Source of the DNA: Rebecca billardiae RCC1528
Lineage: Eukaryota; Protista; Haptophyta
NCBI GenBank assembly: GCA_965240325.2
Contig: OZ251230.1
Location: 744,001 to 808,000, forward strand
DNA: 64,000 bases
Direction: 5' to 3'
The first letter of the stretch is position 1. Each line of letters opens with the position of its first letter. The notes beneath the pieces are model-generated. The model did no database searches. It was not told the DNA's origin and saw only the letters and a list, made by a program, of their open reading frames with translations. Of this stretch, positions 34,543 through 61,711 are shown one piece after another. Both the position numbers and the translations under genes were made by a program.

Positions 34543-37500
34543 ATGGCTGATGGCGTGGACGCGTCCCCGCTCGCGGAGCTCGCCAAGCTGTGGGGGAAAG
34601 GCGACGTGGCGGCGCTGCTCGAGGCGAGCGAGGTCAGCCTTGATGGCAACGCGGCTGTCTCTCAGGGCGTGCCGTGGCAGGGCGTGCTCCAGCTGCTCCT
34701 CACGTCCACACGCCTTGAGACACTCAACCTCTGGTGTGCGCAGAGCGGTGGGGCGGGCAGGTGGCGGCGCCACGTGGCGCGTGCAGACGGAGGCGTATGG
34801 GCACACACTGCCCTGCATGTGGCTGGCCCATCGGCACGTGTCAGCGCCGCTCCGGGTGCCGCGCCGCCGCCGCCGTGTACGCCGCACGCGCTGCTCACAG
34901 CGGCACGTGCGCGCGAGCACACAGGCGGCACACGCGCGCCGATGCGTGCGTGCGTGACGGGCGGGCGGGAGCTTGAGGCGCGCGCATGCATGCTGCATCG
35001 CGTGCGCCATCGCACACGCCGCTCAGCCGCGCCCCGCCCCGCGCCCTCCCCTGCGCGCAGTGAGACCGGCGTGGGTGACGAGGGTGCCACGCAGCTCGGC
35101 GCCGCCCTCGCGTCGGGCAAGACGCGCCTGCGGGAGCTGGACCTCAGGTGAGCGCTGGGGTGGGCACTCCGCGCGGCGCGCGGCGCGTGGACGTTGGGTG
35201 GCGGGGGGGGAGGCTGGGTGGTGCGCATCGTCACGGGCATCGATGCGCACGAGCCCGGGCCGCCGCGCGCGCGCCGCGCCGAGCGCCGCGCCGCCGCCGC
35301 CGCGCGCGCCCGCGCGGCGGCGGCGGCGGCGCGCACACGCAAGCGCGCGCGCATCGGCGCACGCGCGCCGATGCGTGCGCGCGTGACGGGGGCGCGGGAG
35401 CTTGCGGCGCGCGCATGCATGCTGCCTCACGTGTACCATCGCACACGCCGCTCAGCCGCGCCCCGCCCCGCGCCCTCCCCTGCGCGCAGTGAGACCGGCG
35501 TGGGTGACGAGGGTGCCACGCAGCTCGGCGCCGCCCTCGCGTCGGGCAAGACGCGCCTGCGGGTGCTGGACCTCTGGTGAGCGCTGGGGTGGGCACTCGG
35601 CGCGGCGCGCGGCGCGTGGACGTTGGGTGTCGGGGGGGGAGGCTGGGTGGCGCGCGTTGTCGCGGGCATCGATGCGCACGAGCCCGGGCTGCCGCGCGCG
35701 CGCCGCGCCGAGCGCCGTGCCCCCGCGGCCGCGCGCGCCGCCTTCGGCGGCGGCGGCGGCGCGCACACGCGAGCGCGCGCACATCGGCGCACGCGCGCCG
35801 ATGCGTGTGCGCGTGACGGGGGCGCGGGCGCTTGCGGCGCGCGCATGGATGCTGCATCGCGTGTGCCATCGCACACGCCGCTCAGCCGCGCCCCGCCCCG
35901 CGCCCTCCCCTGCGCACAGTTGGACCGGCGTGGGTGACGAGGGTGCCACGCAGCTCGGCGCCGCCCTCGCGTCGGGCAAGACGCGCCTGCGGGAGCTGAA
36001 CCTCTGGTGAGCGCTGGGGTGGGCACTCGGCGCGGCGCGCGGCGCGTGGACGGTGGGTGGCGGGGGAGGAGGCTGGGTGGCGCGCGTTGTCGCGGGCATC
36101 GATGCGCGCGAGCCCGGGCTGCCGCGCGCTTGCCGCGCCGAGCGCCGCGCCGCCGCCGCCGCGCGCGCCGCACGCTGTGGCGGCGGCGCGCACACGCGAG
36201 CGCGCGCGCATCGGCGCACGCGCGCCGATGCGTGCGCGCGTGACGGGGGCGCGGGCGCTTGCGGCGCGCGCATGGATGCTGCATCGCGTGTGCCATCGCA
36301 CACGCCGCTCAGCCGCGCCCCGCCCACCGCCCTCCCCTGCGCACAGTTGGACCGGCGTGGGTGACGAGGGTGCCACGCAGCTCGGCGCCGCCCTCGCGTC
36401 GGGCAAGACGCGCCTGCGGAAGCTGAACCTCGGGTGAGCGCTGGGGTGGGCACTCGGCGCGGCGCGCGGCGCGTGGACGGTGGGTGGCGGGGGGGGGGGC
36501 TGGGTGGCGCGCGTTGCCGCGGGCATCGATGCGCACGAGCCCGGGCTGCCGCGCGCGCGCCGCGCCGAGCGCCGTGCCGCCGCGGCCGCGCGCGCCGCCT
36601 TCGGCGGCGGCGGCGGCGCGCACACGCGAGCGCGCGCGCATCGGCGCACGCGCGCCGATGCGTGCGCGCGTGACGGGGGCGCGGGAGCGTGCGGCGCGCG
36701 TATGCATGCTGCATCGCGTGCGCCATCGCACACGCCGCTCAGCCGCGCCCCGCCCCGCGCCCTCCCCTGCGCGCAGTTACACCGGCGTGGGTGACGAGGG
36801 TGCCACGCAGCTCGGCGCCGCCCTCGCGTCGGGCAAGACGCGCCTGCGGGAGCTGCACCTCTTGTGAGCGCTGGGGTGGGCACTCGGCGCGGCGCGCGGT
36901 GCGTGGACGGTGGGCGGCGGGGGAGGAGGGTGGTTGGCGTGCATCGTCACGGGCATCGATGCGCTCGAGCCCGGGCCGCCGCCGCGCGCGCCGCGCCGAG
37001 CGCCGCGCCGCCGCCGCCGCGCACGCCGCACGCTGCGGCGGCGGCACGCACACGCGAGCGCGCGCGCATCGGCACACGCGCGCCGATGCGTGCGCGCGTG
37101 ACGGGCGGGCGGGAGCTTGCGGCGCGCGCATGCATGCTGCATGGCGCGCGCCATCGCACACGCCGCTCAGCCGCGCCCCGCCCCGCGCCCTCCCCTGCGC
37201 GCAGTGACGACACCCACGTGGGTGACGAGGGTGCCACGCAGCTCGGCGCCGCCCTCGCGTCGGGCAAGACGCGCCTGCGGGTGCTGGGCCTCAGGTGAGC
37301 GCTGGGGTGGGCACTCGGCGCGGCGCGTGGTGCGTGGATGTTGGACGGCGGGGGAGGAGGGTGGGTGACGCGCATCGTCACGGGCATCGATGCGCGCGAG
37401 CCCGGGCTGCCGCGCGCGCCCCGCGCCGAGCGCCGCGCCGCCGCCGCCGAGCGGGCCGCACGCTGCGGCAGCGGCGGCGCGCACACGCGAGCGCGCGCGC

Positions 37501-40500
37501 ATCGGCGCACGCGCGCCGATGCGTGCGCGCAAGACGGGGGTGCTGGAGCTTGCGGCGCGTGCATGCATGCTGCATCGCGTGTGCCATCGCACACGCCGCT
37601 CAGCCGCGCCCCGCCCCGCGCCCTCCCCTGCGCGCAGTGACACCCGCGTGGGTGACGAGGGTGCCACGCAGCTCGGCGCCGCCCTCGCGTCGGGCAAGAC
37701 GCGCCTGCGGGAGCTGTACCTCTGGTGAGCGCTGGGGTGGGCACTCGGCGCGGCGCGCGGTGCGTGGACGGTGGGCGGCGGGGGAGGAGGGTGGGTTGCG
37801 TGCGTTGTCACGGGCATCGATGCGCGCGAGCCCGGGCCACCACGCGCGCCCCGCGCCGAGCGCCGCGCCGTCGCCGCCGAGCGCGCCGCACGCTGCGGCA
37901 GTGGTCGCGCGCACACGCGAGCGCACACGCATCGGCGCACGCGCGCCGATGCGTGTGCGCGTGACGGGGTCGCGGGCGCTCGAGGCGCGCGCATGCATGC
38001 TGCATCGCGTGCGCCATTGCACACGCCGCTCAGCCGCGCCCCGCCCCGCGCCCTCCCCTGCGCGCAGTCGCACCGGCGTGGGTGACGAGGGTGCCACGCA
38101 GCTCGGCGCCGCCCTCGCGTCGGGCAAGACGCGCCTGCGGGTGCTGAGCCTCCAGTGAGCGCTGGGGTGGGCACTCGGCGCGGCGTGCGGCGCGTGGACG
38201 GTGGGTGGCGGGGGAGGAGGGTGGGTGGCGCACAGCACCATAGGCATCGATGCGCGCGAGCCCGGGCGGCCGCGCGCGCGCCGCGCCGAGCGCGGCGCCG
38301 CCACCACCGCGCACGGCGCACGCTGCGGCAGCGGCGGCGCGCACACGCGAGCGCGCGCGCATCGGCGCACGCGCGCCGATGAGTGCGCGCGTGTCGGGGG
38401 CGCGGGAGCTTGCGGCGCGCACGTTTGCATGCTGCATCACGTGCGCCATCGCACACGCCGCTCAGCCGCGCCCCGCCCCGCGCCCTCCCCTGCGCGCAGT
38501 CGCACCCGCGTGGGTGACGAGCGTGCCACGCAGCTCGGCGCCGCCCTCGCGTCGGGCAAGACGCGCCTGCGGGAGCTGCACCTCAAGTGAGCGCTGGGGT
38601 GGGCACTCGGCGCGGCGCGCGGTGCGCGGACGGTGGGCGGCGGGGCAGGAGGCTGGGTGGCGCGCATTGCCACGGGCATCGATGCGCACGAGCCCGGGCT
38701 GCCGCGCGCGCCCCGCGCCGAGCGCCGTGCCCCCGCCGCCGCGCGCGCCGCACGCGGCGGCGGCGGCGGTGCGCACACGCGAGCGCGCGCGCATCGGCGC
38801 ACGCGCGCCGATGCGTGTGCGCGTGACTGGGTCGCTGGCGCTCGAGGCGCGCGCATGCATGCTACATCGCGTGCGCCATCGCACATGCCGCTCAGCCGCG
38901 CCCCGCCCCGCGCCCTCCCCTGCGCGCAGTGAGACCGGCGTGGGTGACGAGGGTGCCACGCAGCTCGGCGCCGCCCTCGCGTCGGGCAAGACGCGCCTGC
39001 GGGTGCTGAACCTCGGGTGAGCGCTGGGGTGGGCACTCGGCGCGGCGCGCGGCGCGTGGACGGTGGGCGGCGGGGGAGGAGGGTGGGTGGCGTGCATGGT
39101 CACGGGCATCGATGCGCGCGAGCCCGGGCTACCGCGCGCGCCCCGCGCCGAGCGCCGCGCCGTCGCCGCCGCGCGCGCCGCACGCTGCGGCAGTGGTCGC
39201 GCGCACACGCGAGCGCACACGCATCGGCGCACGCGCGCCGATGCGTGTGCGCGTGACGGGGTCGCGGGCGCTCGAGGCGCGCGCATGCATGCTGCATCGC
39301 GTGCGCCATTGCACACGCCGCTCAGCCGCGCCCCGCCCCGCGCCCTCCCCTGCGCGCAGTCGCACCGGCGTGGGTGACGAGGGTGCCACGCAGCTCGGCG
39401 CCGCCCTCGCGTCGGGCAAGACGCGCCTGCGGGTGCTGAGCCTCCAGTGAGCGCTGGGGTGGGCACTCGGCGCGGCGTGCGGCGCGTGGACGGTGGGTGG
39501 CGGGGGAGGAGGGTGGGTGGCGCACAGCACCATAGGCATCGATGCGCGCGAGCCCGGGCGGCCGCGCGCGCGCCGCGCCGAGCGCGGCGCCGCCACCACC
39601 GCGCACGGCGCACGCTGCGGCAGCGGCGGCGCGCACACGCGAGCGCGCGCGCATCGGCGCACGCGCGCCGATGAGTGCGCGCGTGTCGGGGGCGCGGGAG
39701 CTTGCGGCGCGCACGTTTGCATGCTGCATCACGTGCGCCATCGCACACGCCGCTCAGCCGCGCCCCGCCCCGCGCCCTCCCCTGCGCGCAGTCGCACCCG
39801 CGTGGGTGACGAGGGTGCCACGCAGCTCGGCGCCGCCCTCGCGTCGGGCAAGACGCGCCTGCGGGTGCTGAGCCTCCAGTGAGCGCTGGGGTGGGCACTC
39901 GGCGCGGCGTGCGGCGCGTGGACGGTGGGTGGCGGGGGAGGAGGGTGGGTGGCGCACAGCACCATAGGCATCGATGCGCGCGAGCCCGGGCGGCCGCGCG
40001 CGCGCCGCGCCGAGCGCGGCGCCGCCACCACCGCGCACGGCGCACGCTGCGGCAGCGGCGGCGCGCACACGCGAGCGCGCGCGCATCGGCGCACGCGCGC
40101 CGATGCGTGTGCGCGTGACTGGGTCGCTGGCGCTCGAGGCGCGCGCATGCATGCTACATCGCGTGCGCCATCGCACATGCCGCTCAGCCGCGCCCCGCCC
40201 CGCGCCCTCCCCTGCGCGCAGTGAGACCGGCGTGGGTGACGAGGGTGCCACGCAGCTCGGCGCCGCCCTCGCGTCGGGCAAGACGCGCCTGCGGGTGCTG
40301 AACCTCTTGTGAGCGCTGGGGTGGGCACTCGGCGCGGCGCGCGGCGCGTGGACGGTGGGCGGCGGGGGAGGAGGCTGGGTGGCGATCATCGTCACGGGCA
40401 TCGATGCGCGCGAGCCCGGGCCGCCGCCGCGCGCGCCGCGCCGAGCGCCGCGCCGCCGCCGCCGCGCGCGCCGCACGCTGCGGCGGCGGCGGCACGCACA

Positions 40501-43500
40501 CGTGAGCGCGCGCGCATCGGCACACGCGCGCTGATGCGTGCGCGCGTGACGGGCGGGCGGGAGCTTGCGGCGCGCGCATGCATGCTGCATCGCGCGCGCC
40601 ATCGCACACGCCGCTCAGCCGCGCTCCGCCCCGCGCCCTCCCCTGCGCGCAGTCTCACCGGCGTGGGTGACGAGGGTGCCACGCAGCTCGGCGCCGCCCT
40701 CGCGTCGGGCAAGACGCGCCTGCGGAAGCTGGACCTCGAGTGAGCGCTGGGGTGGGCACTCGGCGCGGCGCGTGGTGCGTGGATGATGGACGGCGGGGGA
40801 GGAGGCTGGGTGACGCGCATCGTCACGGGCATCGATGCGCGCGAGCCCGGGCTGCCGCGCGCGCCCCGCGCCGAGCGCCGCGCCGCCGCCGCCGAGCGGG
40901 CCGCACGCTGCGGCAGCGGCGGCGCGCACACGCGAGCGCGCGCGCATCGGCGCACGCGCGCCGATGCGTGCGCGCGTGACGGGGGCGCGGGAGCTTGCGG
41001 CGCGCGCATGCATGCTGCCTCACGTGCGCCATCGCACACGCCGCTCAGCCGCGCCCCGCCCCGCGCCCTCCCCTGCGCGCAGTCGCACCGGCGTGGGTGA
41101 CGAGGGTGCCACGCAGCTCGGCGCCGCCCTCGCGTCGGGCAAGACGCGCCTGCGGGAGCTGAACCTCTAGTGAGCGCTGGGGTGGGCACTCGGCGCGGCG
41201 CGCGGCGCGTGGACGGTGGGCGGCGGGGGAGGAGGCTGGGTGGCGATCATCGTCACGGGCATCGATGCGCACGAGCCCGGGCTACCGCGCGCGCGCCGCG
41301 CCGAGCGCCGCGCCGCCGCGGCCGCGCGCGCCGCACGCTGCGGCAGCGGCGGCGCGCACACGCGAGCGCGCGCGCATCGGCGCACGCGCGCCGATGCGTG
41401 CGCGCGTGACGGGGGCGCGGGCGCTTGCGGCGCGCGCATGGATGCTGCATCGCGTGCGCCATCGCACACGCCGCTCAGCCGCGCCCCGCCCCGCGCCCTC
41501 CTCTGCGCGCAGTTACACCCCCGCGTCTGACGAGGTCAAGGAACGCGTCAATCAGGCCCTGGAGGCGAACAGTGCTCGGCTGCAGCAGGAGCCACCCAGG
41601 TGCAAGGGGGGGGGGGGGGGCACAACGCGCCGCGCCCGTGCATGCGCGGGGCGGGCGGGAAAGGGGGCAGCGGCTGGCTGTGATTGGCCGCCCCATGCGC
41701 AACGCACCCCGGCTCTGCCACCGCACGCCCGTGGCACGCGCTTGGCCGCCGCTCACGTGCGCACCTCGCCCACCGCCTGCCTGCGCGCGCAGTGATGACT
41801 CTGCTGACGACTCTGCTGATGACTCTGCTGACGACTCTGCTGACGACTCTGCTGACGACTCGGCCTCTGGCGACGAGGCGGAGGCGGAGGAGCCGGAGAC
41901 CGCGCTCGAGGCGCTCGCGGAGCGGCGGCGCGCTGCGGACGCCGCGCGCGCCGCGCTCGGCGCCGAGCAGGCGGCCATCCGCGCCGCCCTCGGCCGCGGC
42001 GGCGTGGACGAGGCGCGGCTGGCGCGGCGCGACGCGCGCCGTGCCGAGCTGGGCGCCGCGCTCGAGGCGCTCGGCGCGTGCGCGCTCGACGCGCACGCGG
42101 ACTCGCAGCAGCGCGCGGCGGCGCTGCGTCGCGAGGCGCGCGCGTTGCGCGCGGCGCTCGAGCGCGCGGGCACGCCAGAGCAGCCGCGCGCGCCAGCCGG
42201 CGACGGCTCCGCTCCGGCGCCCCTGCCGCCGCCTCGCGCGCTCGAGCGCGCGGTGGGCGCGGCGGTGCGCGCGCACGACGCCGCAGCGCCCACCTCAGGC
42301 GCGGGCGGTGGCGGCGCGGCGCTCGCTGCCGCGTGGGCGGAGGTGGCGCGCCAGGCCATCGCCCTCGCGGCGCGCGGCACGTACGCCGACGCGGACGACG
42401 GCGCGTGCGCCTCGGCGTGGGCGCTCGCCATGCCCGGCCTGTGCGACGCGGCGCGCGCTGCCGCCACAAGCGGCGGCGGCCTGACCGACGCGGCGCGCGC
42501 GCGCGCGGCCGCGTGCGACGAGCGCGCCGCAGTGGCCGAGCGCGCGCGCACGATCGCGCGCGAGGCGGAGGCGGAGGCGCGCGAGCTGCGCGCGCTGCCG
42601 TCCGCCGAGCGCGCGCACGGCGCGCACGAGCTGCGCGAGCGCGAGGAGGCGTGCAGGGCGGCGGCGCGCGCGCTGCGCCTCGCGCGCCACGCTTTAGAAA
42701 ACGCGCAGGACGACGGCGGCGACGTGGACGGCGCACAGCGCGCACTCGTCGACGCGCAGCGGCGCGCGCAGCGCACGCAGCGCGCGCGCGAGCGCTCGCT
42801 CGACCGCCTGTACGAGCTGGCGGGCGGGCCGTTCCCCGAGCTGCCCGCCATGCTGCCCGAGGCGTTCGACGGCGCGGGCGCGCTGCCCGCGGGCGCGCGG
42901 CCCGCGTGGCTGCACGGCCGCACGCTCGCGCAGTACGAGCCGTGCGAGTGGCCCGACGGCGCGGCGCCCGGCCGCGCGCGGCACGAGGTGCTGCTGCGCG
43001 CGTTCGCGGGCGAGCGCGTTGTGCTCAAGGTGTACCCGCTGGCGAGCGACACGGAGCGCCGGCTGCTCGGGCGCGAGGTGGAGTTTGCGCTGGCGCACGC
43101 GCACCCACACCTCGCGCGCGTGGCGGGCGTCTTTGTCGACGAGCCGCGCGGCGCGCGCTGCGCGCTCGTGCAGACGCCGCTCTACTCGGGCGGCACGCTG
43201 CGCGGCTGGCTCGAGCGCGACGAGGCGGCGGCGGGCTTGCCGCCCGAGGCGGTGCGCGGTGGCGCGGCGGGCGCGCGTATGCTCGAGCCGGCGCACGCGC
43301 GCGTCGCGCCCGTGCGCGTGCGCGCGCTGCGGCAGCTGCTGGGCGCGCTCGCGCACCTGCACGCGCGCGGCGCGGTGCACGGCGACGTGAAGCTCGAGAA
43401 CGCGTTCGTGCAGCTGCCGGGCGACGACGCGGCCGAGCGGCCGCTCGGCGCGGCCGAGCCGTTCCGCGTGCTGCTCGGCGACTTTGACCTGGCGCGCGTG

Positions 43501-44667
43501 GAGGAGGCGCTGCAGCACGCGGCTGGCGGCGGCGTGCCGAGCGCGACGACGCGCGCGGGCGCGGGCACCGAGGGCCACATGGCGCCCGAGCTGCTCGTGC
43601 CCGGCGCGCGCGCGAGCGCGGCGTCGGACGTGTTCGCGTTCGGCGTGTGCGTGCTGCGCGCGCTCGCGGCCGACGAGCCGACGCGCGCCGCGCTCGTGGG
43701 CTCGGTGCAGGGCGCGCGCGCCGCGGCGGCTGCGCTGGGCGAGCCGCTCGTCGTGGCCGCGCTGTCGGACGCGCCGGGCGCGCGGCCGAGCGCGGCGCAG
43801 CTCGAGGGCGCGGCGCTGTGGGCGGCGAGCGACGAGGCGCTGCGCGCGGCCGAGGCCGAGCGCGAGGCGGCGGCCGCGAGCGCGCGCGCCGCGCTGCGCA
43901 CGTGCGCGGTGTGCTTGGACGAGGAGGTGCCGCCGGACGAGTGCGCCGAGTGCGCGGGCGGCGGGCACGCGGTGTGCTCGCTCTGCCTCTCCACGCACGT
44001 GCAGCTGTGCGCGCAGCCCGACGGCGGCGGCGGCGCGACGCTCGACGCGGACGGGCGCGTGCCGTGCGTCGAGGTGGGCAGCGGCTGCGCGCACGCGTAC
44101 CTGGACGGCGAGCTCGCGCGCCGCACGACCGCCGCGGCGTTCGGCGCGTACTGGCGCGCGCGCGAGCAGCACGCCGAGGCGCGCGGCGAGGAGCGCGCGG
44201 CCGAGCGCGCGCGCGCCGAGGCCTTGCGCCTCGCGGCGCTCAGCGCGGCCGAGCGCGTGCGCGAGCAGCGGCGCGCGCACATCATCGATCATATCCTCAC
44301 GCTCAAGTGCCCGCGCTGCGGCATGGCGTTTGCCGAGTGGCTCGACGGCGCGCGCGGCTTCGACGGCTGCTGCGCGCTGCAGTGCGCGCGCGATCGGTGC
44401 GGCTGCCACTTCTGCGCCTACTGCCTCGCCGACTGCGGCGCCGACGCGCACCCGCACGTGCGCGGCTGCGAGCACGGCAACGGCACGTACTTTGCGCAGC
44501 GCGGCGAGTTTGAGGCGGCGCAGCGCGCGCGGCGTGAGCGCGCGCTGCGCCGCTACCTCGCCGACGAGGCGGGCGCGGACGACGCGGCGCGCCGAGCGAT
44601 CGTCGCGTCCGTCGAGCGCGAGCTGCGCGACCTCCGCATCGACCCAGACGCACTCGCGCGCGAGTGA
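34543..44667 (+). CDS. LRR - kinase - RING/RBR-like protein, copy 4 (15 LRR exons)
   Basis: Exons 34543-34733; LRR exons start at 35061, 35490, 35920, 36347, 36777, 37205 (90 nt), 37638, 38068, 38500, 38930, 39360, 39792, 40222, 40653, 41083; cap 41513-41599; terminal 41793-44667. Confidence 0.85.
34734..41512 (+). repeat. Intron + LRR-exon cassettes, array 4
   Basis: Same ~430-bp unit, 15 exons. Confidence 0.95.
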
Positions 44668-44940
44668 CCGGTGGGCCCCGGGGGCGTCGGCTGCGCGCAG
44701 CCAGGCGCGGGCGGGCACGTGGGCACGAGCTGAGCGCGATGATGCTCTGCGGGGGCCACGTGCGCGGATGCACCGCCACGCTGAACACGCTGGTGCCGAA
44801 TCGCACGTGGCGGCTGGGGGCGCTCACCCAGCTCCGCGCCGTCGAGAGCTCCGAGCCGGAGCTACGCCGGCCGCTGAGGGGCGTCGGGGAGAGGGATGAG
44901 ACGGAGGCGCGCGCAGCGACGATGCGCGGCTCGGTGGCTA

Positions 44941-45687
44941 CGCGCTCCAGTGAACGGCGCACGGTGAACGAGTTGGCGACCTTCTCCTTCGTGATGACGA
45001 TTAAATCGCTCAGCTTGCCGAGGAGGATCCCCGCCCACTTGTGCGCGTACCCGCTCGACGCGCCCACGGCGACCGCAGCGTCGGCGAGCTCGATCCCCGA
45101 TCGGATCAGCTCCTCGCGCCGCGCCGCGTCCTCGGCCGCCTGCTTGGACAGCTCGTAGCGCGCGCGCGCACGCCGCCAGAGGAGCTCGACGTCGTCAGCC
45201 GCGGGTGCAGCGGAGGCCTCCTGCTCGAGCAGTGCGTACAGCGCTTCGTATTCGCCCGCGGCGTGCATCTCGTCCGCGCGCGAGAAGCGCGCTGGGCTCT
45301 CTTCGAGGGGCGGTGCCATCTGCCCACTCGGCCTCTCGAGGCTGGTCGCACTCCCGGCGTCAGGTGAGGCCGAGCCGTCCAGTGCAGCCCGCGCTGCAGC
45401 CTCGCCCGGGGCGGTAGCATCGGGTTTGCGGCGGCGATAGAGCCGCAGCGGGGAAAGGCGCGAGAGAACCCGACGTACGCGGCCAGGCGGCGCTGAAGCT
45501 CCCTCCTCACGTTCCTCCTCGCAGGACGAATCCGCCGCATCATGGCAACACACGTGCGTGCAGGCGAAGGCGGCAGGAGCTTGCATCCGGGCGCGAGGGT
45601 CGGAGATGAGCCTGGCCAGTGCGTGCGAGGAATGTGGGCACCACCAAAGGGCACGGCGGCGATTACTAGCACGACGGCCAACCGCAT
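44941..45687 (-). pseudogene. RMD1-like copy 5, 3'-truncated with a 5' frameshift
   Basis: Nearly identical to copy 4 but without the MITE. Confidence 0.8.
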
Positions 45688-45864
45688 TACGCGGCCGTCC
45701 ACCGCCGCGGGAGATTGGGCAGCCATCAAGACGACTCGCCCTCGTCACGAAAAGGCAAAAGCTGAGACGAAATGAAAGGCTCGCATCCGGACCAGCAACC
45801 ACCGGAACTCCGGAAGGCATCGGCCACCAGCCTCGCCACTCTCGGAGGCGCCCAGTGCGACAGC

Positions 45865-48800
45865 ATGGCTGATGGCGTGGACGCGTCCCCGCTCGCGGAG
45901 CTCGCCAAGCTGTGGGGGAAAGGCGACGTGGCGGCGCTGCTCGAGGCGAGCGAGGTCAGCCTTGATGGCAACGCGGCTGTCTCTCAGGGCGTGCCGTGGC
46001 AGGGCGTGCTCCAGCTGCTCCTCACGTCCACACGCCTTGAGACACTCAACCTCTGGTGTGCGCAGAGCGGTGGGGCGGGCAGGTGGCGGCGCCACGTGGC
46101 GCGTGCAGACGGAGGCGTATGGGCACACACTGCCCTGCATGTGGCTGGCCCATCGGCACGTGTCAGCGCCGCTCCGGGTGCCGCGCCGCCGCCGCCGTGT
46201 ACGCCGCACGCGCTGCTCACAGCGGCACGTGCGCGCGAGCACACAGGCGGTGCACGCGCGGAGATGCGTGCGCGCGTGACGGGCGGGCGGGAGCTTGAGG
46301 CGCGCGCATGCATGCTGCATCGCGTGCGCCATCGCACACGCCGCTCAGCCGCGCCCCGCCCCGCGCCCTCCCCTGCGCGCAGTGAGACCGGCGTGGGTGA
46401 CGAGGGTGCCACGCAGCTCGGCGCCGCCCTCGCGTCGGGCAAGACGCGCCTGCGGGAGCTGGACCTCAGGTGAGCGCTGGGGTGGGCACTCCGCGCGGCG
46501 CGCGGCGCGTGGACGTTGGGTGGCGGGGGGGGAGGCTGGGTGGTGCGCATCGTCACGGGCATCGATGCGCACGAGCCCGGGCCGCCGCGCGCGCGCCGCG
46601 CCGAGCGCCGCGCCGCCGCCGCCGCGCGCGCCCGCGCGGCGGCGGCGGCGGCGCGCACACGCAAGCGCGCGCGCATCGGCGCACGCGCGCCGATGCGTGC
46701 GCGCGTGACGGGGGCGCGGGAGCTTGCGGCGCGCGCATGCATGCTGCCTCACGTGTACCATCGCACACGCCGCTCAGCCGCGCCCCGCCCCGCGCCCTCC
46801 CCTGCGCGCAGTGAGACCGGCGTGGGTGACGAGGGTGCCACGCAGCTCGGCGCCGCCCTCGCGTCGGGCAAGACGCGCCTGCGGGTGCTGGACCTCTGGT
46901 GAGCGCTGGGGTGGGCACTCGGCGCGGCGCGCGGCGCGTGGACGTTGGGTGTCGGGGGGGGAGGCTGGGTGGCGCGCGTTGTCGCGGGCATCGATGCGCA
47001 CGAGCCCGGGCTGCCGCGCGCGCGCCGCGCCGAGCGCCGTGCCCCCGCGGCCGCGCGCGCCGCCTTCGGCGGCGGCGGCGGCGCGCACACGCGAGCGCGC
47101 GCGCATCGGCGCACGCGCGCCGATGCGTGCGCGCGTGACGGGGGCGCGGGAGCGTGCGGCGCGCGTATGCATGCTGCATCGCGTGCGCCATCGCACACGC
47201 CGCTCAGCCGCGCCCCGCCCCGCGCCCTCCCCTGCGCGCAGTTTCACCGGCGTGGGTGACGAGGGTGCCACGCAGCTCGGCGCCGCCCTCGCGTCGGGCA
47301 AGACGCGCCTGCGGAAGCTGAACCTCGGGTGAGCGCTGGGGTGGGCACTCGGCGCGGCGCGCGGCGCGTGGACGGTGGGTGGCGGGGGGGGGGGCTGGGT
47401 GGCGCGCGTTGTCGCGGGCATCGATGCGCACGAGCCCGGGCTGCCGCGCGCGCGCCGCGCCGAGCGCCGTGCCGCCGCCGCCGCGCGCGCCGCACGCTGT
47501 GGCGGCGGCGCGCACACGCGAGCGCGCGCGCATCGGCGCACGCGCGCCGATGCGTGCGCGCGTGACGGGCGGGCGGGAGCTTGCGGCGCGCGCATGCATG
47601 CTGCATCGCGCGCGCCATCGCACACGCCGCTCAGCCGCGCTCCGCCCCGCGCCCTCCCCTGCGCGCAGTCTCACCGGCGTGGGTGACGAGGGTGCCACGC
47701 AGCTCGGCGCCGCCCTCGCGTCGGGCAAGACGCGCCTGCGGAAGCTGAACCTCGGGTGAGCGCTGGGGTGGGCACTCGGCGCGGCGCGCGGCGCGTGGAC
47801 GGTGGGTGGCGGGGGGGGGGGCTGGGTGGCGCGCGTTGTCGCGGGCATCGATGCGCACGAGCCCGGGCTGCCGCGCGCGCGCCGCGCCGAGCGCCGTGCC
47901 GCCGCGGCCGCGCGCGCCGCCTTCGGCGGCGGCGGCGGCGCGCACACGCGAGCGCGCGCGCATCGGCGCACGCGCGCCGATGCGTGCGCGCGTGACGGGG
48001 GCGCGGGAGCGTGCGGCGCGCGTATGCATGCTGCATCGCGTGCGCCATCGCACACGCCGCTCAGCCGCGCCCCGCCCCGCGCCCTCCCCTGCGCGCAGTT
48101 TCACCGGCGTGGGTGACGAGGGTGCCACGCAGCTCGGCGCCGCCCTCGCGTCGGGCAAGACGCGCCTGCGGGAGCTGGGCCTCTTGTGAGCGCTGGGGTG
48201 GGCACTCGGCGCGGCGCGCGGCGCGTGGACGGTGGGCGGCGGGGGAGGAGGGTGGTTGGCGTGCATCGTCACGGGCATCGATGCGCTCGAGCCCGGGCCG
48301 CCGCCGCGCGCGCCGCGCCGAGCGCCGCGCCGCCGCCGCCGCGCACGCCGCACGCTGCGGCGGCGGCACGCACACGCGAGCGCGCGCGCATCGGCGCACG
48401 CGCGCCGATGCGTGCGCGCGTGACGGGCGGGCGGGAGCTTGCGGCGCGCGCATGCATGCTGCATGGCGCGCGCCATCGCACACGCCGCTCAGCCGCGCTC
48501 CGCCCCGCGCTCTGCCCTGCGCGCAGTTGCACCGGCGTGGGTGACGAGGGTGCCACGCAGCTCGGCGCCGCCCTCGCGTCGGGCAAGACGCGCCTGCGGG
48601 TGCTGGGCCTCAGGTGAGCGCTGGGGTGGGCACTCGGCGCGGCGCGTGGTGCGTGGACGGTGGGCGGCGGGGGAGGAGGGTGGGTTGCGTGCGTTGTCAC
48701 GGGCATCGATGCGCGCGAGCCCGGGCCACCACGCGCGCCCCGCGCCGAGCGCCGCGCCGTCGCCGCCGCGCGCGCCGCACGCTGCGGCAGTGGTCGCGCG

Positions 48801-51800
48801 CACACGCGAGCGCACACGCATCGGCGCACGCGCGCCGATGCGTGTGCGCGTGACGGGGTCGCGGGCGCTCGAGGCGCGCGCATGCATGCTGCATCGCGTG
48901 CGCCATTGCACACGCCGCTCAGCCGCGCCCCGCCCCGCGCCCTCCCCTGCGCGCAGTGCCACCCGCGTGGGTGACGAGGGTGCCACGCAGCTCGGCGCCG
49001 CCCTCGCGTCGGGCAAGACGCGCCTGCGGGCGCTGCACCTCTAGTGAGCGCTGGGGTGGGCACTCGGCGCGGCGTGCGGCGCGTGGACGGTGGGTGGCGG
49101 GGGAGGAGGGTGGTTGGCGTGCATCGTCACGGGCATCGATGCGCTCGAGCCCGGGCCGCCGCCGCGCGCGCCGCGCCGAGCGCCGCGCCGCCGCCGCCGC
49201 GCACGCCGCACGCTGCGGCGGCGGCACGCACACGCGAGCGCGCGCGCATCGGCGCACGCGCGCCGATGCGTGCGCGCGTGACGGGCGGGCGGGAGCTTGC
49301 GGCGCGCGCATGCATGCTGCATGGCGCGCGCCATCGCACACGCCGCTCAGCCGCGCCCCGCCCCGCGCCCTCCCCTGCGCGCAGTGACACCCACGTGGGT
49401 GACGAGGGTGCCACGCAGCTCGGCGCCGCCCTCGCGTCGGGCAAGACGCGCCTGCGGGTGCTGGGCCTCAGGTGAGCGCTGGGGTGGGCACTCGGCGCGG
49501 CGCGTGGTGCGTGGATGTTGGACGGCGGGGGAGGAGGGTGGGTGACGCGCATCGTCACGGGCATCGATGCGCGCGAGCCCGGGCTGCCGCGCGCGCCCCG
49601 CGCCGAGCGCCGCGCCGCCGCCGCCGAGCGGGCCGCACGCTGCGGCAGCGGCGGCGCGCACACGCGAGCGCGCGCGCATCGGCGCACGCGCGCCGATGCG
49701 TGCGCGCGAGACGGGGGTGCTGGAGCTTGCGGCGCGTGCATGCATGCTGCATCGCGTGTGCCATCGCACACGCCGCTCAGCCGCGCCCCGCCCCGCGCCC
49801 TCCCCTGCGCGCAGTGACACCCGCGTGGGTGACGAGGGTGCCACGCAGCTCGGCGCCGCCCTCGCGTCGGGCAAGACGCGCCTGCGGGAGCTGTACCTCT
49901 GGTGAGCGCTGGGGTGGGCACTCGGCGCGGCGCGCGGTGCGTGGACGGTGGGCGGCGGGGGAGGAGGGTGGGTTGCGTGCGTTGTCACGGGCATCGATGC
50001 GCGCGAGCCCGGGCCACCACGCGCGCCCCGCGCCGAGCGCCGCGCCGTCGCCGCCGCGCGCGCCGCACGCTGCGGCAGTGGTCGCGCGCACACGCGAGCG
50101 CACACGCATCGGCGCACGCGCGCCGATGCGTGTGCGCGTGACGGGGTCGCGGGCGCTCGAGGCGCGCGCATGCATGCTGCATCGCGTGCGCCATTGCACA
50201 CGCCGCTCAGCCGCGCCCCGCCCCGCGCCCTCCCCTGCGCGCAGTCGCACCGGCGTGGGTGACGAGGGTGCCACGCAGCTCGGCGCCGCCCTCGCGTCGG
50301 GCAAGACGCGCCTGCGGGTGCTGAGCCTCCAGTGAGCGCTGGGGTGGGCACTCGGCGCGGCGTGCGGCGCGTGGACGGTGGGTGGCGGGGGAGGAGGGTG
50401 GGTGGCGCACAGCACCATAGGCATCGATGCGCGCGAGCCCGGGCGGCCGCGCGCGCGCCGCGCCGAGCGCGGCGCCGCCACCACCGCGCACGGCGCACGC
50501 TGCGGCAGCGGCGGCGCGCACACGCGAGCGCGCGCGCATCGGCGCACGCGCGCCGATGAGTGCGCGCGTGTCGGGGGCGCGGGAGCTTGCGGCGCGCACG
50601 TTTGCATGCTGCATCACGTGCGCCATCGCACACGCCGCTCAGCCGCGCCCCGCCCCGCGCCCTCCCCTGCGCGCAGTCGGACCCGCGTGGGTGACGAGGG
50701 TGCCACGCAGCTCGGCGCCGCCCTCGCGTCGGGCAAGACGCGCCTGCGGGTGCTGAACCTCTTGTGAGCGCTGGGGTGGGCACTCGGCGCGGCGCGCGGC
50801 GCGTGGACGGTGGGCGGCGGGGGAGGAGGCTGGGTGGCGATCATCGTCACGGGCATCGATGCGCACGAGCCCGGGCCGCCGCCGCGCGCGCCGCGCCGAG
50901 CGCCGCGCCGCCGCCGCCGCGCGCGCCGCACGCTGCGGCGGCGGCGGCACGCACACGCGAGCGCGCGCGCATCGGCGCACGCGCGCCGATGCGTGCGCGC
51001 GTGACGGGCGGGCGGGAGCTTGCGGCGCGCGCATGCATGCTGCATCGCGCGCGCCATCGCACACGCCGCTCAGCCGCGCTCCGCCCCGCGCCCTCCCCTG
51101 CGCGCAGTCTCACCGGCGTGGGTGACGAGGGTGCCACGCAGCTCGGCGCCGCCCTCGCGTCGGGCAAGACGCGCCTGCGGAAGCTGGACCTCGAGTGAGC
51201 GCTGGGGTGGGCACTCGGCGCGGCGCGTGGTGCGTGGATGATGGACGGCGGGGGAGGAGGCTGGGTGACGCGCATCGTCACGGGCATCGATGCGCGCGAG
51301 CCCGGGCTGCCGCGCGCGCCCCGCGCCGAGCGCCGCGCCGCCGCCGCCGAGCGGGCCGCACGCTGCGGCAGCGGCGGCGCGCACACGCGAGCGCGCGCGC
51401 ATCGGCGCACGCGCGCCGATGCGTGCGCGCATGACGGGGGCGCGGGAGCTTGCGGCGCGCGCATGCATGCTGCCTCACGTGCGCCATCGCACACGCCGCT
51501 CAGCCGCGCCCCGCCCCGCGCCCTCCCCTGCGCGCAGTCGCACCGGCGTGGGTGACGAGGGTGCCACGCAGCTCGGCGCCGCCCTCGCGTCGGGCAAGAC
51601 GCGCCTGCGGGAGCTGCGCCTCGGGTGAGCGCTGGGGTGGGCACTCGGCGCGGCGCGCGGCGCGTGGACGGTGGGCGGCGGGGGAGGAGGCTGGGTGGCG
51701 ATCATCGTCACGGGCATCGATGCGCACGAGCCCGGGCTACCGCGCGCGCGCCGCGCCGAGCGCCGCGCCGCCGCGGCCGCGCGCGCCGCACGCTGCGGCA

Positions 51801-54800
51801 GCGGCGGCGCGCACACGCGAGCGCGCGCGCATCGGCGCACGCGCGCCGATGCGTGCGCGCGTGACGGGGGCGCGGGCGCTTGCGGCGCGCGCATGGATGC
51901 TGCATCGCGTGCGCCATCGCACACGCCGCTCAGCCGCGCCCCGCCCCGCGCCCTCCTCTGCGCGCAGTTACACCCCCGCGTCTGACGAGGTCAAGGAACG
52001 CGTCAATCAGGCCCTGGAGGCGAACAGTGCTCGGCTGCAGCAGGAGCCACCCAGGTGCAAGGGGGGGGGGGGGGGCACAACGCGCCGCGCCCGTGCATGC
52101 GCGGGGCGGGCGGGAAAGGGGGCAGCGGCTGGCTGTGATTGGCCGCCCCATGCGCAACGCACCCCGGCTCTGCCACCGCACGCCCGTGGCACGCGCTTGG
52201 CCGCCGCTCACGTGCGCACCTCGCCCACCGCCTGCCTGCGCGCGCAGTGATGACTCTGCTGACGACTCTGCTGATGACTCTGCTGACGACTCTGCTGACG
52301 ACTCTGCTGACGACTCGGCCTCTGGCGACGAGGCGGAGGCGGAGGAGCCGGAGACCGCGCTCGAGGCGCTCGCGGAGCGGCGGCGCGCTGCGGACGCCGC
52401 GCGCGCCGCGCTCGGCGCCGAGCAGGCGGCCATCCGCGCCGCCCTCGGCCGCGGCGGCGTGGACGAGGCGCGGCTGGCGCGGCGCGACGCGCGCCGTGCC
52501 GAGCTGGGCGCCGCGCTCGAGGCGCTCGGCGCGTGCGCGCTCGACGCGCACGCGGACTCGCAGCAGCGCGCGGCGGCGCTGCGTCGCGAGGCGCGCGCGT
52601 TGCGCGCGGCGCTCGAGCGCGCGGGCACGCCACAGCAGCCGCGCGCGCCAGCGGGCGACGGGTCCGCTCCGGCGCCCCTGCCGCCGTCTCGCGCGCTCGA
52701 GCGCGCGGTGGGCGCGGCGGTGCGCGCGCACGACGGCGCAGCGCCGCCCTCCGCCGCGGGCGGTGGCGGCGCGGCGCTCGCTGCCGCGTGGGCGGAGGTC
52801 GCGCGCCAGGCCATCGCCCTCGCGGCGCGCGGCACGTACGCCGACGCGGACGACGGCGCGTGCGCCTCGGCGTGGGCGCTCGCCATGCCCGGCCTGTGCG
52901 ACGCGGCGCGCGCTGCCGCCACAGGCGGCGGTGGCCTGACCGACGCGGCGCGTGCGCGCGCGGCCGCGTGCGACGAGCTCGCCGCAGTGGCCGAGCGCGC
53001 GCGCACGATCGCGCGCGAGGCGGAGGCGGAGGCGCGCGAGCTCCGCGCGCTGCCGTCCGCCGAGCGCGCGCACGGCGCGCACGAGCTGCGCGAGCGCGAG
53101 GAGGCGTGCAGGGCGGCTGCGCGCGCGCTGCGCCTCGCGCGCCGCGCTCTAGAAGATGCTCAGGACGACGGCGGCGACGTGGACGGCGCACAGCGCGCGC
53201 TCGTCGACGCGCAGCGGCGCGCGCAGCGCACGCAGCGCGCGCGCGAGCGCTCGCTCGACCGCCTGTACGAGCTGGCGGGCGGGCCGTTCCCCGAGCTGCC
53301 CGCGATGCTGCCCGAGGCGTTCGACGGCGCGGGCGCGCTGCCCGCGGGCGCGCGGCCCGCGTGGCTGCACGGCCGCACGCTCGCGCAGTACGAGCCGTGC
53401 GAGTGGCCCGACGGCGCGGCGCCCGGCCGCGCGCGGCACGAGGTGCTGCTGCGCGCGTTCGCGGGCGAGCGCGTCGTGCTCAAGGTGTACCCGCTGGCGA
53501 GCGACACGGAGCGCCGGCTGCTCGGGCGCGAGGTGGAGTTTGCGCGGGCGCACGCGCACCCACACCTCGCGCGCGTGGCGGGCGTCTTTGTCGACGAGCC
53601 GCGCGGCGCGCGCTGCGCGCTCGTGCAGACGCCGCTCTACTCGGGCGGCACGCTGCGCGGCTGGCTCGAGCGCGACGAGGCGGCGGCGGGCTTGCCGCCC
53701 GAGGCGGTGCGCGGCGGCGCGCCGGGCGCGCGTATGCTCGAGCCGGCGCACGCGCGCGTCGCGCCCGTGCGCGTGCGCGCGCTGCGGCAGCTGCTGGGCG
53801 CGCTCGCGCACCTGCACGCGCGCGGCGCGGTGCACGGCGACGTGAAGCTCGAGAACGCGTTCGTGCAGCTGCCGGGCGACGACGCGGCGGAGCGGCCGCT
53901 CGGCGCGGCCGAGCCGTTCCGCATGCTGCTCGGCGACTTTGACCTGGCGCGCGTGGAGGAGGCGCTGCAGCACGCGGCTGGCGGCGGCGTGCCGAGCGCG
54001 ACGACGCGCGCGGGCGCGGGCACCGAGGGCCACATGGCGCCCGAGCTGCTCGTGCCCGGCGCGCGCGCGAGCGCGGCGTCGGACGTGTTCGCGTTCGGCG
54101 TGTGCGTGCTGCGCGCGCTCGCGGCCGACGAGCCGACGCGCGCCGCGCTCGTGGGCTCGCTCGAGGGCGCGCGCGCCGCGGCGGCTGCGCTGGGCGAGCC
54201 GCTCGTCGTGGCCGCGCTGTCGGACGCGCCGGGCGCGCGGCCGAGCGCGGCGCAGCTCGAGGGCGCGGCGCTGTGGGCGGCGAGCGACGAGGCGCTGCGC
54301 GCGGCCGAGGCCGAGCGCGAGGCGGCGGCCGCGAGCGCGCGCGCCGCGCTGCGCACGTGCGCGGTGTGCTTGGACGAGGAGGTGCCGCCGGACGAGTGCG
54401 CCGAGTGCGCGGGCGGCGGGCACGCGGTGTGCTCGCTCTGCCTCTCCATGCACGTGCAGGTGTGCGCGCAGCCCGACGGCGGCGGCGGCGCGGCGCTCGA
54501 CGCGGACGGGCGCGTGCCGTGCGTCGAGGCGGGCACTGGCTGCGCGCACGCGTACCTAGACGGCGAGCTCGCGCGCCGCACGACCGCCGCGGCGTTTGGC
54601 GCGTACTGGCGCGCGCGCGAGCAGCACGCCGAGGCGCGCGGCGAGGAGCGGGCGGCCGAGCGCGCGCGCGCCGAGGCCTTGCGCCTCGCGGCGCTCAGCG
54701 CGGCCGAGCGCGTGCGCGAGCAGCGGCGCGCGCACATCATCGATCATATCCTCACGCTCAAGTGCCCGCGCTGCGGCATGGCGTTTGCCGAGTGGCTCGA

Positions 54801-60930: not shown

Positions 60931-61711
60931 TGCTAACTTTTGCGCCGAGTCCTTAACCACTCGGACACGCAAAAGCTCCCACGACGCGCCGTGGGAGCTT
61001 TTGCGTGTCCGAGTGGTTAAGGACTTGGCGCAAGAGTTAGCATAACGCGGTTCCTTCCGGCGGGTTTGTTCTTTAGCCTGGTGTTGTTCCTTCACCAGCG
61101 TTCCGACGGGCCGCGGGCCATCCGCCGTCCCGCTCTCATGAGCCTTTCAGGGACTGATCTTCACCTCGTTCAGCGGGAGTGAAGAAGAAGCGCACTTTCG
61201 GGCGAAAGAGCGTTGCGCAACCGGACTCGAACCGCGCTATGCTAACTTTTGCGCCGAGTCCTTAACCACTCGGACACGCAAAAGCTCCCACGACGCTGCG
61301 CCGAGTACTTAACCACTCGGACACGCAAAAGCTCCCAACGACGCGTCGTGGGAGCTTTTGCGTGTCCGAGTGGTTAAGGACTCGGCGCAAAAGTTAGCAT
61401 AGCGCGGTTCGAGTCCGGTTGCGCAACGCTCTTTCGCCCGAAAGTGCGCTTCTTCTTCACTCCCGCTGAACGGGGTGAAGATCCGTCCCTGAAAGGCTCA
61501 TGAGAGCTGGACGGCGATGGCCCGCTGCCCGTCGGAACGCTGGTGAAGGAACAATGTTCACCAGGCTAAAGAACAAACCCGCCGGAAGGAACCGCGTTAT
61601 GCTAACTTTTGCGCCGAGTACTTAACCACTCGGACACGCAAAAGCTCCCACGACGCGTCGTGGGAGCTTTTGCGTGTCCGAGTGGTTAAGGACTCGGCGC
61701 AAAAGTTAGCA
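60931..61711. mobile_element. 781-bp nested palindromic insertion with tRNA-like A and B boxes
   Basis: Flanked by TGTTA (60926-30 and 61712-16). Removing it restores the pol frame (PQCPVCSLACYDCAC). Three palindromes are separated by mutually inverted spacers. Confidence 0.7.

What the first reader, a model, noticed from the sequence alone, without database searches (positions are those of the whole stretch)
37205..51624. Traces of shuffling: chimeric exons and chimeric introns recombine halves of the binding strand
Seen: each intron sits in the middle of the variable strand, with x1, x2 and two-thirds of x3 upstream and x4, x5 downstream. Introns marked GCACAGCACCATAG always follow VLSL-CA (38154, 39446, 39878, 50331) and normally precede RTR. 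Intron 39879-40221 instead switches midway to the GTGACTGGGTCGCTGG...GCTACATC type of intron 38587-38929 and leads into ETG, creating a new strand combination. Copy-5 exon 50677 (RTR...VLNL-TT) joins the 5' end of copy-4 exon 38500/39792 to the 3' end of exon 40222, implying a crossover in the invariant core that removed or added whole cassettes. Inference: two homology tracts per unit give two shuffling modes, with core crossovers moving whole strands and intron crossovers mixing half-strands.
Basis: partly seen in the sequence, partly recalled or inferred. Interest (0 to 1): 0.8.

Follow-up and report, generated by a model that had tools for sequence, protein, structure and literature searches.

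The report
Recombination scars in LRR exon arrays
Two neighbouring copies of an algal sensor-like gene, whose binding domain is built from near-identical one-repeat exons, carry clear scars of copy-and-paste recombination that re-pair halves of binding strands; the scars look real, but the process is the ordinary one seen in tandem repeat genes and no reads were available to confirm the assembly.

Summary
The window holds five tandem genes. Each has an array of 87-bp exons that each encode one 29-residue ribonuclease-inhibitor-type LRR, separated by about 343-bp introns, then a kinase and an RBR-like zinc-finger tail.

Every intron lies after the second base of the x3 codon, inside the β-strand.

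- **Unit 39792-40221** is a clean mosaic. It matches unit 38500 at its start and from 40063 on. It is identical to units 38068/39360/50245 over 39800-40105 (exact 3SEQ-type p=2.5e-10, Bonferroni 3e-5).
- **Exon 50677** joins two contexts that lie one or four units apart in gene 4. The junction lies within 50685-50750, in the invariant core.
- **Further mosaics** exist at 47045-47102 and 48601-47. The two halves of an intron carry uncorrelated relationships (r=0.03 against 0.33 expected).

I read this as germline unequal crossover and gene conversion in a homogenised repeat array whose five binding-face codons diverge 18 times faster than the introns. That matches brown-alga ROCO LRR exons and fungal NLR repeats.

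There is no evidence of a programmed system or of clustered breakpoints. No independent reads exist, so a polishing artefact is not excluded.

The scan had already noted this family, and similar footprints, elsewhere in this genome.

The parts
35061..41169 (+). Gene 4 LRR array: 15 exons of 87 nt (one of 90 nt), each encoding one 29-residue RI-type LRR, separated by 340-345-bp introns
   Evidence: A single exon translation hits porcine ribonuclease inhibitor 1dfj_I at E=0.0013.
46383..51624 (+). Gene 5 LRR array: 13 exons, partly collinear with gene 4 at 99.7-100% identity
39800..40105 (+). Conversion patch in unit 39792-40221 (largest extent shown; smallest extent 39814-40062). It is identical to units 38068, 39360 and 50245. 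It carries VLSL-CA and the first 184-227 nt of the GCACAGCACCATAG-type intron into a unit otherwise like unit 38500.
   Evidence: positions of differences; p=2.5e-10, corrected 3.2e-5; identical to one clade in the 5' intron tree and to the other in the 3' tree.
40063..40306 (+). Tract identical to 38771-39014: the 3' part of the GTGACTGGGTCGCTGG...GCTACATC intron plus the ETG exon. This is the second identical tract at an offset of 1292 bp (3 units).
39173..39813 (+). 641-bp tract identical to 37881-38521, at an offset of 1292 bp. It is the footprint of a very recent three-unit duplication or conversion inside gene 4.
50677..50763 (+). Chimeric exon RTR...VLNL-TT. The upstream context equals gene 4 up to 38521/39813 and the downstream context equals gene 4 from 40230. 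The junction lies within 50685-50750, in the invariant core. Gene 4 has 1 or 4 more units here.
   Evidence: (double unit u47+u48, p=3.6e-15).
47045..47102 (+). Breakpoint interval in intron 46899-47241. All 11 informative sites match unit 35490 up to 47044, and all 8 match units 36347/47669 from 47103.
   Evidence: p=6.2e-8, corrected 5.7e-3.
48601..48647 (+). Short patch in unit 48527. The exon 3' end VLGL-AG plus the first 34 nt of the intron match units 49385/37205, while the rest of the intron (30 sites from 48658 on) matches unit 49815. A half-strand has moved together with the start of its intron.
51617..51624 (+). Exon-end block ELRL-GG, against ELNL-TA at 41162-41169. Four nucleotides differ, while the downstream 343-bp introns are identical and the upstream introns differ at one site. 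Neither version has a donor in the window.
41513..41599 (+). 87-nt cap exon (YTPASDEVKERVNQALEANSARLQQEPP) that supplies the last half-strand. It is identical at 51968-52054.
41793..44667 (+). Tail exon of gene 4: DDSA repeat, coiled coil, protein kinase, RING-like finger and parkin/Ariadne RING2-like finger. It is 97.1% identical to the gene 5 tail.
   Evidence: Pkinase 1.7e-13; parkin RING2, E=0.019; fold hits to RBR ligases, best E 5e-3.

Best explanation
These are germline footprints of unequal crossover and gene conversion within and between two recently homogenised tandem paralogs of an LRR-kinase-RBR-like gene.

The LRR domain is an array of 430-bp exon-plus-intron units. Mispaired units can exchange anywhere along the unit. 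All exons are 87 nt with the same intron phase (2), so every gain, loss or swap of units stays in frame.

Because the intron splits each β-strand, the position of an exchange end decides its effect. A tract ending in an intron makes a new strand from two half-strands. A tract ending in the exon core moves whole strands.

Repeated exchange keeps the scaffold homogeneous. The five concave-face codons diverge fast, most likely under diversifying selection.

Shown here: the mosaics, their significance, the in-frame architecture and the rate contrast. Inferred: the molecular mechanism (conversion versus double crossover), the direction of each event, selection, and a receptor role.
For: - Clean mosaics with zero-difference tracts.
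- Exact recombination tests survive Bonferroni correction.
- The PHI statistic is 0.162 against 0.218±0.008 in permutations.
- Distance matrices of the 5' and 3' intron halves are uncorrelated: r=0.026 against 0.327±0.10 for random column splits, p=0.0035. Across the exon, r=0.231 against 0.438±0.096, p=0.024.
- Trees of the two intron parts place units 39792, 46812 and 47242 in different clades.
- Collinear array segments of genes 4 and 5 are 99.7-100% identical. Their tails are 97.1% identical and the 3' non-coding DNA about 90-95%, so the arrays were exchanged more recently than the rest of the gene.
- Genes 4 and 5 differ by whole units (15 against 13 exons) and both stay open.
- Nucleotide diversity is 0.0014 in the 57-nt exon core, 0.080 in introns and 0.3-0.73 at x sites.
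- x sites differ 18 times more than introns between collinear units.
- The same process is published for brown-alga ROCO LRR exons (PMC3341825, PMC11378527) and fungal NLR WD repeats (PMC1805685).
Against: - There is no independent sequence. The only public run holding any words gave two 101-nt contigs at 40961-41061, and collection scans found nothing. The mosaics rest on one assembly.
- No RNA data exist, so the splicing model is inferred from GT-AG sites, phase and the RI-type repeat.
- Some sharing of exon ends could be convergence, because the x alphabets are small.
- The order and direction of events cannot be rooted.
Confidence: 0.8

Rival explanations
1. Assembly or polishing artefact. 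In a 430-bp repeat array, mis-mapped reads used for polishing, or a collapsed or expanded repeat, could write a neighbour's sequence into unit 39792 and could create the difference in unit number between genes 4 and 5.
For: The patch is 249-306 bp, about the size of a read or fragment, and is 100% identical to three other units. No reads could be laid to check it.
Against: - Several independent mosaics of different sizes occur in both genes.
- The global signal spans all five genes.
- The array keeps unit-specific differences and open frames throughout.
- A short-read assembly could hardly have resolved five such arrays in one 64-kb stretch.
- An earlier scan note reports similar footprints in a further copy (s1-372104, not checked here).
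Confidence: 0.1
2. A selected or programmed cassette-shuffling system. The invariant core and homogenised introns would be kept as recombination substrates, and exchange (germline at a raised rate, or somatic) would generate receptor diversity, as in lamprey VLR assembly.
For: - Synonymous sites of the exon core are frozen: 1 of 24 third positions varies against 180 of 340 intron columns, p=1.5e-6.
- x-site changes come in bursts per exon end (dispersion 2.3, p=0.0014).
- Short patches move a half-strand together with its intron start.
- Every rearrangement is in frame by construction.
Against: - All five genes are complete and open. There is no incomplete germline gene with flanking donor cassettes.
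- Breakpoints are not clustered.
- No recombination signal or enzyme was identified, there is no Rfam match, and intron folding is unremarkable.
- Codon bias and splicing constraints could explain the frozen core.
- Ordinary concerted evolution explains everything seen.
Confidence: 0.05
3. No recombination: the apparent chimeras arise from independent point mutations, and from convergence at a few selected codons, in units that duplicated in place.
For: The exon-end alphabets are small. Identical 5' end haplotypes sit next to unrelated upstream introns no less often than chance predicts.
Against: The runs seen would not arise by independent mutation: 30 consecutive informative sites of one parent followed by 16 of the other, most of them in intron sequence; zero-difference tracts of 641, 306 and 244 bp; and test p-values of 1e-10 to 1e-15.
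Confidence: 0.02

Closest known systems
Brown-alga (Ectocarpus and kelp) ROCO genes with one-LRR-per-exon arrays and exon shuffling (Zambounis 2012, PMC3341825; Teng 2024, PMC11378527)
   Same: One LRR per exon of fixed length, symmetric intron phase (phase 2 according to PMC11378527), unit number varying between paralogs, variation concentrated on the concave face, and a proposed cytosolic receptor role.
   Different: - Here the repeat is the 29-residue RI type, not the 24-residue type.
- The intron cuts the LxxLxLxx strand itself, whereas the Ectocarpus type I exon holds the whole LxxLxLxxN strand.
- Introns are homogenised along with the exons.
- The effector part is kinase plus RBR-like fingers, not ROC-COR.
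- No reverse-strand or inactivated intronic LRR copies were found (no core on the minus strand).
Fungal HNWD/NLR genes with highly internally conserved WD, ANK or TPR repeats (Paoletti, Saupe and Clavé 2007, PMC1805685)
   Same: Nucleotide-level homogeneity of the repeats, exchange of repeat units within and between paralogs, variable repeat number, and a handful of hypervariable interaction-surface codons per repeat.
   Different: The fungal repeats lie in one exon with no intron per repeat. The fold (WD40) and the effector (NACHT) differ. RIP does not apply here.
Vertebrate NLR and ribonuclease-inhibitor genes with strict exonic modularity of RI-type LRRs (Hoss 2019, PMC6642158)
   Same: RI-type LRRs, with the exon border always at the same place inside the β-sheet, so every exon carries the end of one strand and the start of the next. 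Exon gain or loss stays in frame.
   Different: - Vertebrate exons hold two repeats (171 bp), not one.
- Their introns are not homogenised.
- The known use there is alternative splicing, not recent unit exchange.
Lamprey and hagfish VLR assembly
   Same: LRR cassettes are combined through short homology, which gives chimeric LRR modules.
   Different: VLR assembly is somatic. It starts from an incomplete germline gene with hundreds of flanking donor cassettes and is linked to AID-like deaminases. Here all genes are complete, and nothing somatic is shown.

Membership tests
RI-type (ribonuclease-inhibitor-like) LRR | 28-29-residue repeat matching LxxLxLxx(N/C)xLxxxGxxxLxxxLxxxxx, with similarity to RI repeats | tested here: met
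   The repeat reads LRxLxLx|xTxVGDEGATQLGAALASGKTR. A single exon (window:38069-38152) hits porcine RI 1dfj_I at E=0.0013 over six repeats, and a designed RI-type LRR protein, 4r5d. The consensus is quoted in PMC6642158. T stands where N/C is usual.
RI-type (ribonuclease-inhibitor-like) LRR | Pfam LRR_6 (PF13516) match | tested here: inconclusive
Single 28-residue exon translations gave no Pfam hit at E up to 10. The distant relative P0003 has a weak LRR_6 hit (E=0.0012).
Exon-cassette LRR arrays evolving by exon shuffling (brown-alga ROCO kind) | One LRR per exon, equal exon length and symmetric intron phase | tested here: met
   There are 51 exons: 47 of 87 nt and 4 of 90 nt. All have phase 2 on both sides.
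Exon-cassette LRR arrays evolving by exon shuffling (brown-alga ROCO kind) | Evidence that units were duplicated, lost or exchanged | tested here: met
Exon-cassette LRR arrays evolving by exon shuffling (brown-alga ROCO kind) | ROC-COR GTPase effector | tested here: not met
   Pfam finds a protein kinase and a weak RING hit, but no ROC or COR. This locus works like the ROCO arrays but is not a ROCO gene.
Exon-cassette LRR arrays evolving by exon shuffling (brown-alga ROCO kind) | Positive selection on concave-face residues (codon models) | not tested
   Only descriptive measures were made: x-site diversity 0.3-0.73 against 0.0014 in the core, an 18-fold excess over introns, and variation confined to first and second codon positions. 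No codeml-type test was run, and recombination would bias one.
Concerted evolution of highly internally conserved repeats (fungal HNWD kind) | Repeats exchanged both within and between paralogs | tested here: met
   Within gene 4. Between genes 4 and 5, the arrays are 99.7-100% identical against 97.1% for the tails.
Concerted evolution of highly internally conserved repeats (fungal HNWD kind) | NACHT or NB-ARC nucleotide-binding domain | tested here: not met
   No such Pfam or NCBIfam hit was found in the tail. The short N-terminal exon has no domain.
VLR-type somatic cassette assembly | Incomplete germline gene plus separate donor cassettes | tested here: not met
   All five arrays are complete, spliceable and open, and sit inside full genes. 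There are no cores on the minus strand or between genes.
VLR-type somatic cassette assembly | Somatic differences between cells | not testable with these tools
   No raw reads of this organism were available.
RBR (RING-between-RING) E3 ligase tail | RING1, IBR and RING2 (Rcat) with a catalytic cysteine | tested here: inconclusive
   - zf-C3HC4 scores E=0.0015-0.0076, below the Pfam cut-off.
- A profile of 7 sequences hits parkin and Ariadne RING2 domains at E=0.019-0.076.
- The AF2 model (pLDDT 80) has RBR ligases as its top Foldseek hits, but none at E<=0.001.
- No IBR was recognised.

The most novel reading that the evidence does not exclude
The unit design would be a selected diversity engine of a cytosolic LRR-kinase-ubiquitin-ligase receptor family in a GC-rich microalga. 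The design has three parts: an exon core frozen at nucleotide level, homogenised introns, and a phase-2 intron that splits every binding strand. Short conversion tracts, germline at a raised rate or even somatic, would move half-strand blocks between cassettes genome-wide and build new binding strands combinatorially. The burst-like replacement of exon-end blocks without any flanking change (41162-41169 against 51617-51624; 48601-48647) would be its signature.
Probability: 0.06. Interest if true: 0.85.

Novelty: new member of a known kind. Interest (0 to 1): 0.42.

Why it matters
Candidate immune-type receptors of marine microalgae are almost unknown, although these algae are under heavy attack by viruses and parasites. 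This locus gives a very clean, base-resolved picture of how an LRR binding surface is renewed. Whole units are gained, lost and pasted between paralogs. Because the intron sits inside the strand, some exchanges create binding strands that neither parent had.

The work gives concrete junctions to test by long reads and in population data. It also raises one open question: why the exon core is frozen even at synonymous sites while the introns drift.

The process itself is the known one for tandem repeat receptors, so the finding extends the phenomenon to a new lineage and a new domain architecture. It does not reveal a new mechanism.

Tried and rejected
- **Reads.** The look-up of sequencing runs gave one run with 9% of the words. 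Laying it gave only two 101-nt contigs at 95% identity, so the spanning-read test was impossible.
- **Collection scans.** Exact scans for the exon core in metagenome contigs (57-mer and 29-mer) and in viral contigs (29-mer) found nothing.
- **First 3SEQ-type scan.** It was contaminated by the insertion in intron 5638-6016, which counted as many differences. I redid it on gap-free columns.
- **AU tests on the half-intron trees.** They could not run because the mosaic unit is identical to its relatives in each half.
- **Breakpoint hot spot.** The incompatibility profile along the unit is flat within noise. Four of seven narrow intron intervals fall in unit positions 234-328, which is not significant.
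- **Intron function.** The RNA fold z-score is -1.7 and there is no Rfam family.
- **Tail homologs.** The first word search found nothing because of low-complexity words. The search restricted to residues 690-957 found four relatives.
- **Tail structure.** The single-sequence AF2 model was too poor to use (pLDDT 54).
- **Single exons against Pfam.** No hit.
- **Linkage between exon-end blocks.** There was no power outside the recent gene 4/5 duplicates.
- **Big representative-protein search.** Not used.

Full report
**What is there**

The window is about 80% G+C in the relevant parts. It holds five tandem paralogs on the + strand. Their LRR exons lie at 2977-6103, 12166-13545, 24690-29062, 35061-41169 and 46383-51624.

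Each gene is built as follows:
- a short first exon that ends in a half-strand (LETLNL-TG);
- an array of 87-nt exons (four are 90 nt) separated by introns of 338-348 nt (one is 379 nt);
- an 87-nt cap exon;
- one long exon with a DDSA repeat, a coiled coil, a protein kinase (Pfam 1.7e-13) and a Cys-rich end.

All donors are GT. All acceptors are AG, apart from one boundary that my script set one base off. No exon has an in-frame stop.

One exon encodes xTxVGDEGATQLGAALASGKTRLRxLxL plus two bases. This is a 29-residue ribonuclease-inhibitor-type LRR. A single exon translation hits porcine RI at E=0.0013 over six repeats.

Exons were searched one by one, by reference.

**The rate contrast**

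| Region | Nucleotide diversity among 51 units | Source |
|---|---|---|
| 57-nt exon core (identical in 49 of 51) | 0.0014 | |
| Introns | 0.080 | |
| Variable bases of the five x codons | 0.3-0.73 | |

- In x1, x2 and x5 only the first and second codon positions vary.
- Third positions of the 24 other codons vary in 1 case, against 180 of 340 intron columns (Fisher p=1.5e-6).
- Between collinear units of genes 4 and 5, x sites differ at 10.2% and introns at 0.56%. The x changes come in bursts per exon end (dispersion 2.3, p=0.0014).

**Check of the observation**

Every intron lies after the second base of the x3 codon, which is phase 2. x1, x2 and two thirds of x3 are upstream, and x4 and x5 are downstream.

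The marker GCACAGCACCATAG occurs four times, only after the four VLSL-CA exon ends. GTGACTGGGTCGCTGG and GCTACATC occur only in introns 38587-38929 and 39879-40221.

Unit 39792-40221 compares as follows:
- Against unit 38500-38929: 30 differences, all within 39814-40062.
- Against units 38068 and 39360: one difference at 39799 and 16 within 40106-40178.

So the unit resembles unit 38500 at both ends and carries a 249-306-bp patch identical to units 38068/39360/50245.
- An exact max-descent (3SEQ-type) test on gap-free columns gives p=2.5e-10, or 3.2e-5 after correction for 124,950 triplets.
- In trees of the two intron parts, the unit is identical to one clade in the 5' part and to the other clade in the 3' part.

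For exon 50677:
- Gene 5 49385-50698 equals gene 4 37208-38521 apart from 4 sites.
- Gene 5 50685-51967 equals gene 4 40230-41512 apart from 9 sites.

The junction therefore lies in the invariant core (50685-50750). Gene 4 holds one or four more units at this place.

**More of the same**

- At an offset of 1292 bp (three units), gene 4 has zero-difference tracts of 641 bp (37881-38521 = 39173-39813) and 244 bp (38771-39014 = 40063-40306). This is a very recent three-unit duplication or conversion, interrupted by two replaced patches.
- Intron 46899-47241 switches from unit 35490 (11 of 11 sites) to units 36347/47669 (8 of 8 sites) between 47045 and 47102.
- Unit 48527 has the exon end VLGL-AG and 34 nt of intron from the 49385 type, inside a unit of the 49815 type.
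- Gene 5 has two extra units (858 bp) relative to intron 36864-37204 of gene 4.
- Over all 51 units, the PHI statistic is 0.162 against 0.218±0.008.
- Distances from the 5' and 3' intron halves are uncorrelated: r=0.026 against 0.327±0.10 for random column splits, p=0.0035. Across the exon the loss is milder: r=0.231 against 0.438±0.096, p=0.024.
- I found no significant clustering of breakpoints.

**Exchange between paralogs**

Three measures of identity between genes 4 and 5 stand apart:
- The tails are 97.1% identical.
- The 3' non-coding DNA is about 90-95% identical.
- Collinear parts of the arrays, the 719 bp upstream and the first 500 bp of the tail are 99.2-100% identical.

The arrays have therefore been homogenised between genes more recently than the rest of the gene.

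**Interpretation**

The simplest account is germline unequal crossover and gene conversion among mispaired 430-bp units, together with fast divergence of the five binding-face codons.

- A tract that ends in an intron creates a strand neither parent had. Unit 39792 gives VLSL-H|ETG.
- A junction in the exon core keeps strands whole. Exon 50677 keeps VLSL-H|RTR upstream and VLNL-F|LTG downstream.

The idea of two discrete homology tracts and two dedicated modes goes beyond the data. The whole unit is homologous (introns 92% identical). The showcase intron chimera is one end of a patch whose other end lies in the exon.

**What I could not exclude**

No independent reads or contigs exist in the tools. 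A polishing or assembly artefact therefore stays possible; I put it at about 0.1. No RNA data were available, so splicing is inferred.

**The gene family**

The tail has relatives elsewhere:
- an MMETSP transcript (47% identity);
- a JGI protein;
- an ENA protein (P0004, 36% identity, no Pfam hit);
- a 1528-residue protein with RI-type LRRs, a kinase and the same Cys-rich end (34% identity).

A profile of the Cys-rich end hits the RING2 domains of parkin and Ariadne at E=0.02-0.08. An AF2 model (pLDDT 80) has RBR ligases as its top fold hits, best E 5e-3. This is a weak but consistent RBR-like reading, and it agrees with earlier scan note s1-371886.

**Comparison with what is known**

- Brown-alga ROCO genes have one LRR per exon, shuffled and under selection (PMC3341825, PMC11378527).
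- Fungal HNWD genes exchange nucleotide-identical repeats within and between paralogs, with four hypervariable codons per repeat (PMC1805685).
- Vertebrate NLR genes place the exon border at a fixed point inside the β-sheet of RI-type LRRs (PMC6642158).

This locus combines these known features in a new lineage, with a kinase and RBR-like effector.

The scan had already noted this family 10 kb beyond the window, similar recombination footprints 19 kb beyond it, and gene-conversion mosaics in other tandem families of this genome.

**Verdict**

I class it as a new member of a known kind. Interest is moderate, 0.42.

Noticed in passing
window 41096-41152 and all 51 exon cores (for example 38081-38137): Synonymous sites of the exon core are frozen: 1 of 24 third positions varies against 53% of intron columns. 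This includes two GGT codons in an ~80% G+C locus. Codon bias, splicing signals in short exons, or exon-centred conversion could each explain it.
   Followed up: partly
window 41162-41169 vs 51617-51624: Four of eight bases differ (ELNL-TA against ELRL-GG). The flanking introns are identical downstream and differ at one site upstream. Neither version has a donor in the window. This points to micro-conversion from cassettes elsewhere, or to strong selection.
   Followed up: partly
window 40085-40105 (same place in every intron, unit positions ~294-314): A conserved inverted repeat, CATCGGCGC-ACGC-GCGCCGATG, sits in each intron. It lies next to the zone where four of seven narrow intron breakpoint intervals fall. 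The overlap is not significant.
   Followed up: partly
window 44900-45820 (- strand), repeated after each gene copy: An ORF on the opposite strand resembles RMD1-3 (regulator of microtubule dynamics), Pfam E=6e-5, below the cut-off. It is part of the ~11-kb duplicated block.
   Followed up: partly
window 41793-41861, 52248-52316, 29685-29744, 6720-6752, 14167-14196: A 12-bp repeat, TGA(C/T)GACTCTGC, encodes DDSA at the start of the tail exon. It has 2.5 to 5.8 copies in different paralogs.
   Followed up: no
window 61670-63316 (+): A reverse-transcriptase ORF (RVT_1, 1.3e-16) marks a retroelement at the lower-GC end of the window.
   Followed up: partly
window 46166-46382 (and 34844-35060): The last ~220 nt of the first intron, before the first LRR exon, are ~85% similar to the 3' part of the array introns. 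The array unit therefore extends into the first intron.
   Followed up: partly
window 22469-22798 and 20492-20607: A 64-bp x5 and a 58-bp x2 tandem repeat lie in the long spacer between genes 2 and 3.
   Followed up: no
P0003 (Logan protein, 1528 aa): A distant relative (34% identity in the tail) has diverse, non-homogenised RI-type LRRs followed by a coiled coil, a kinase and the same Cys-rich end. The architecture therefore predates the homogenised arrays seen here.
   Followed up: partly
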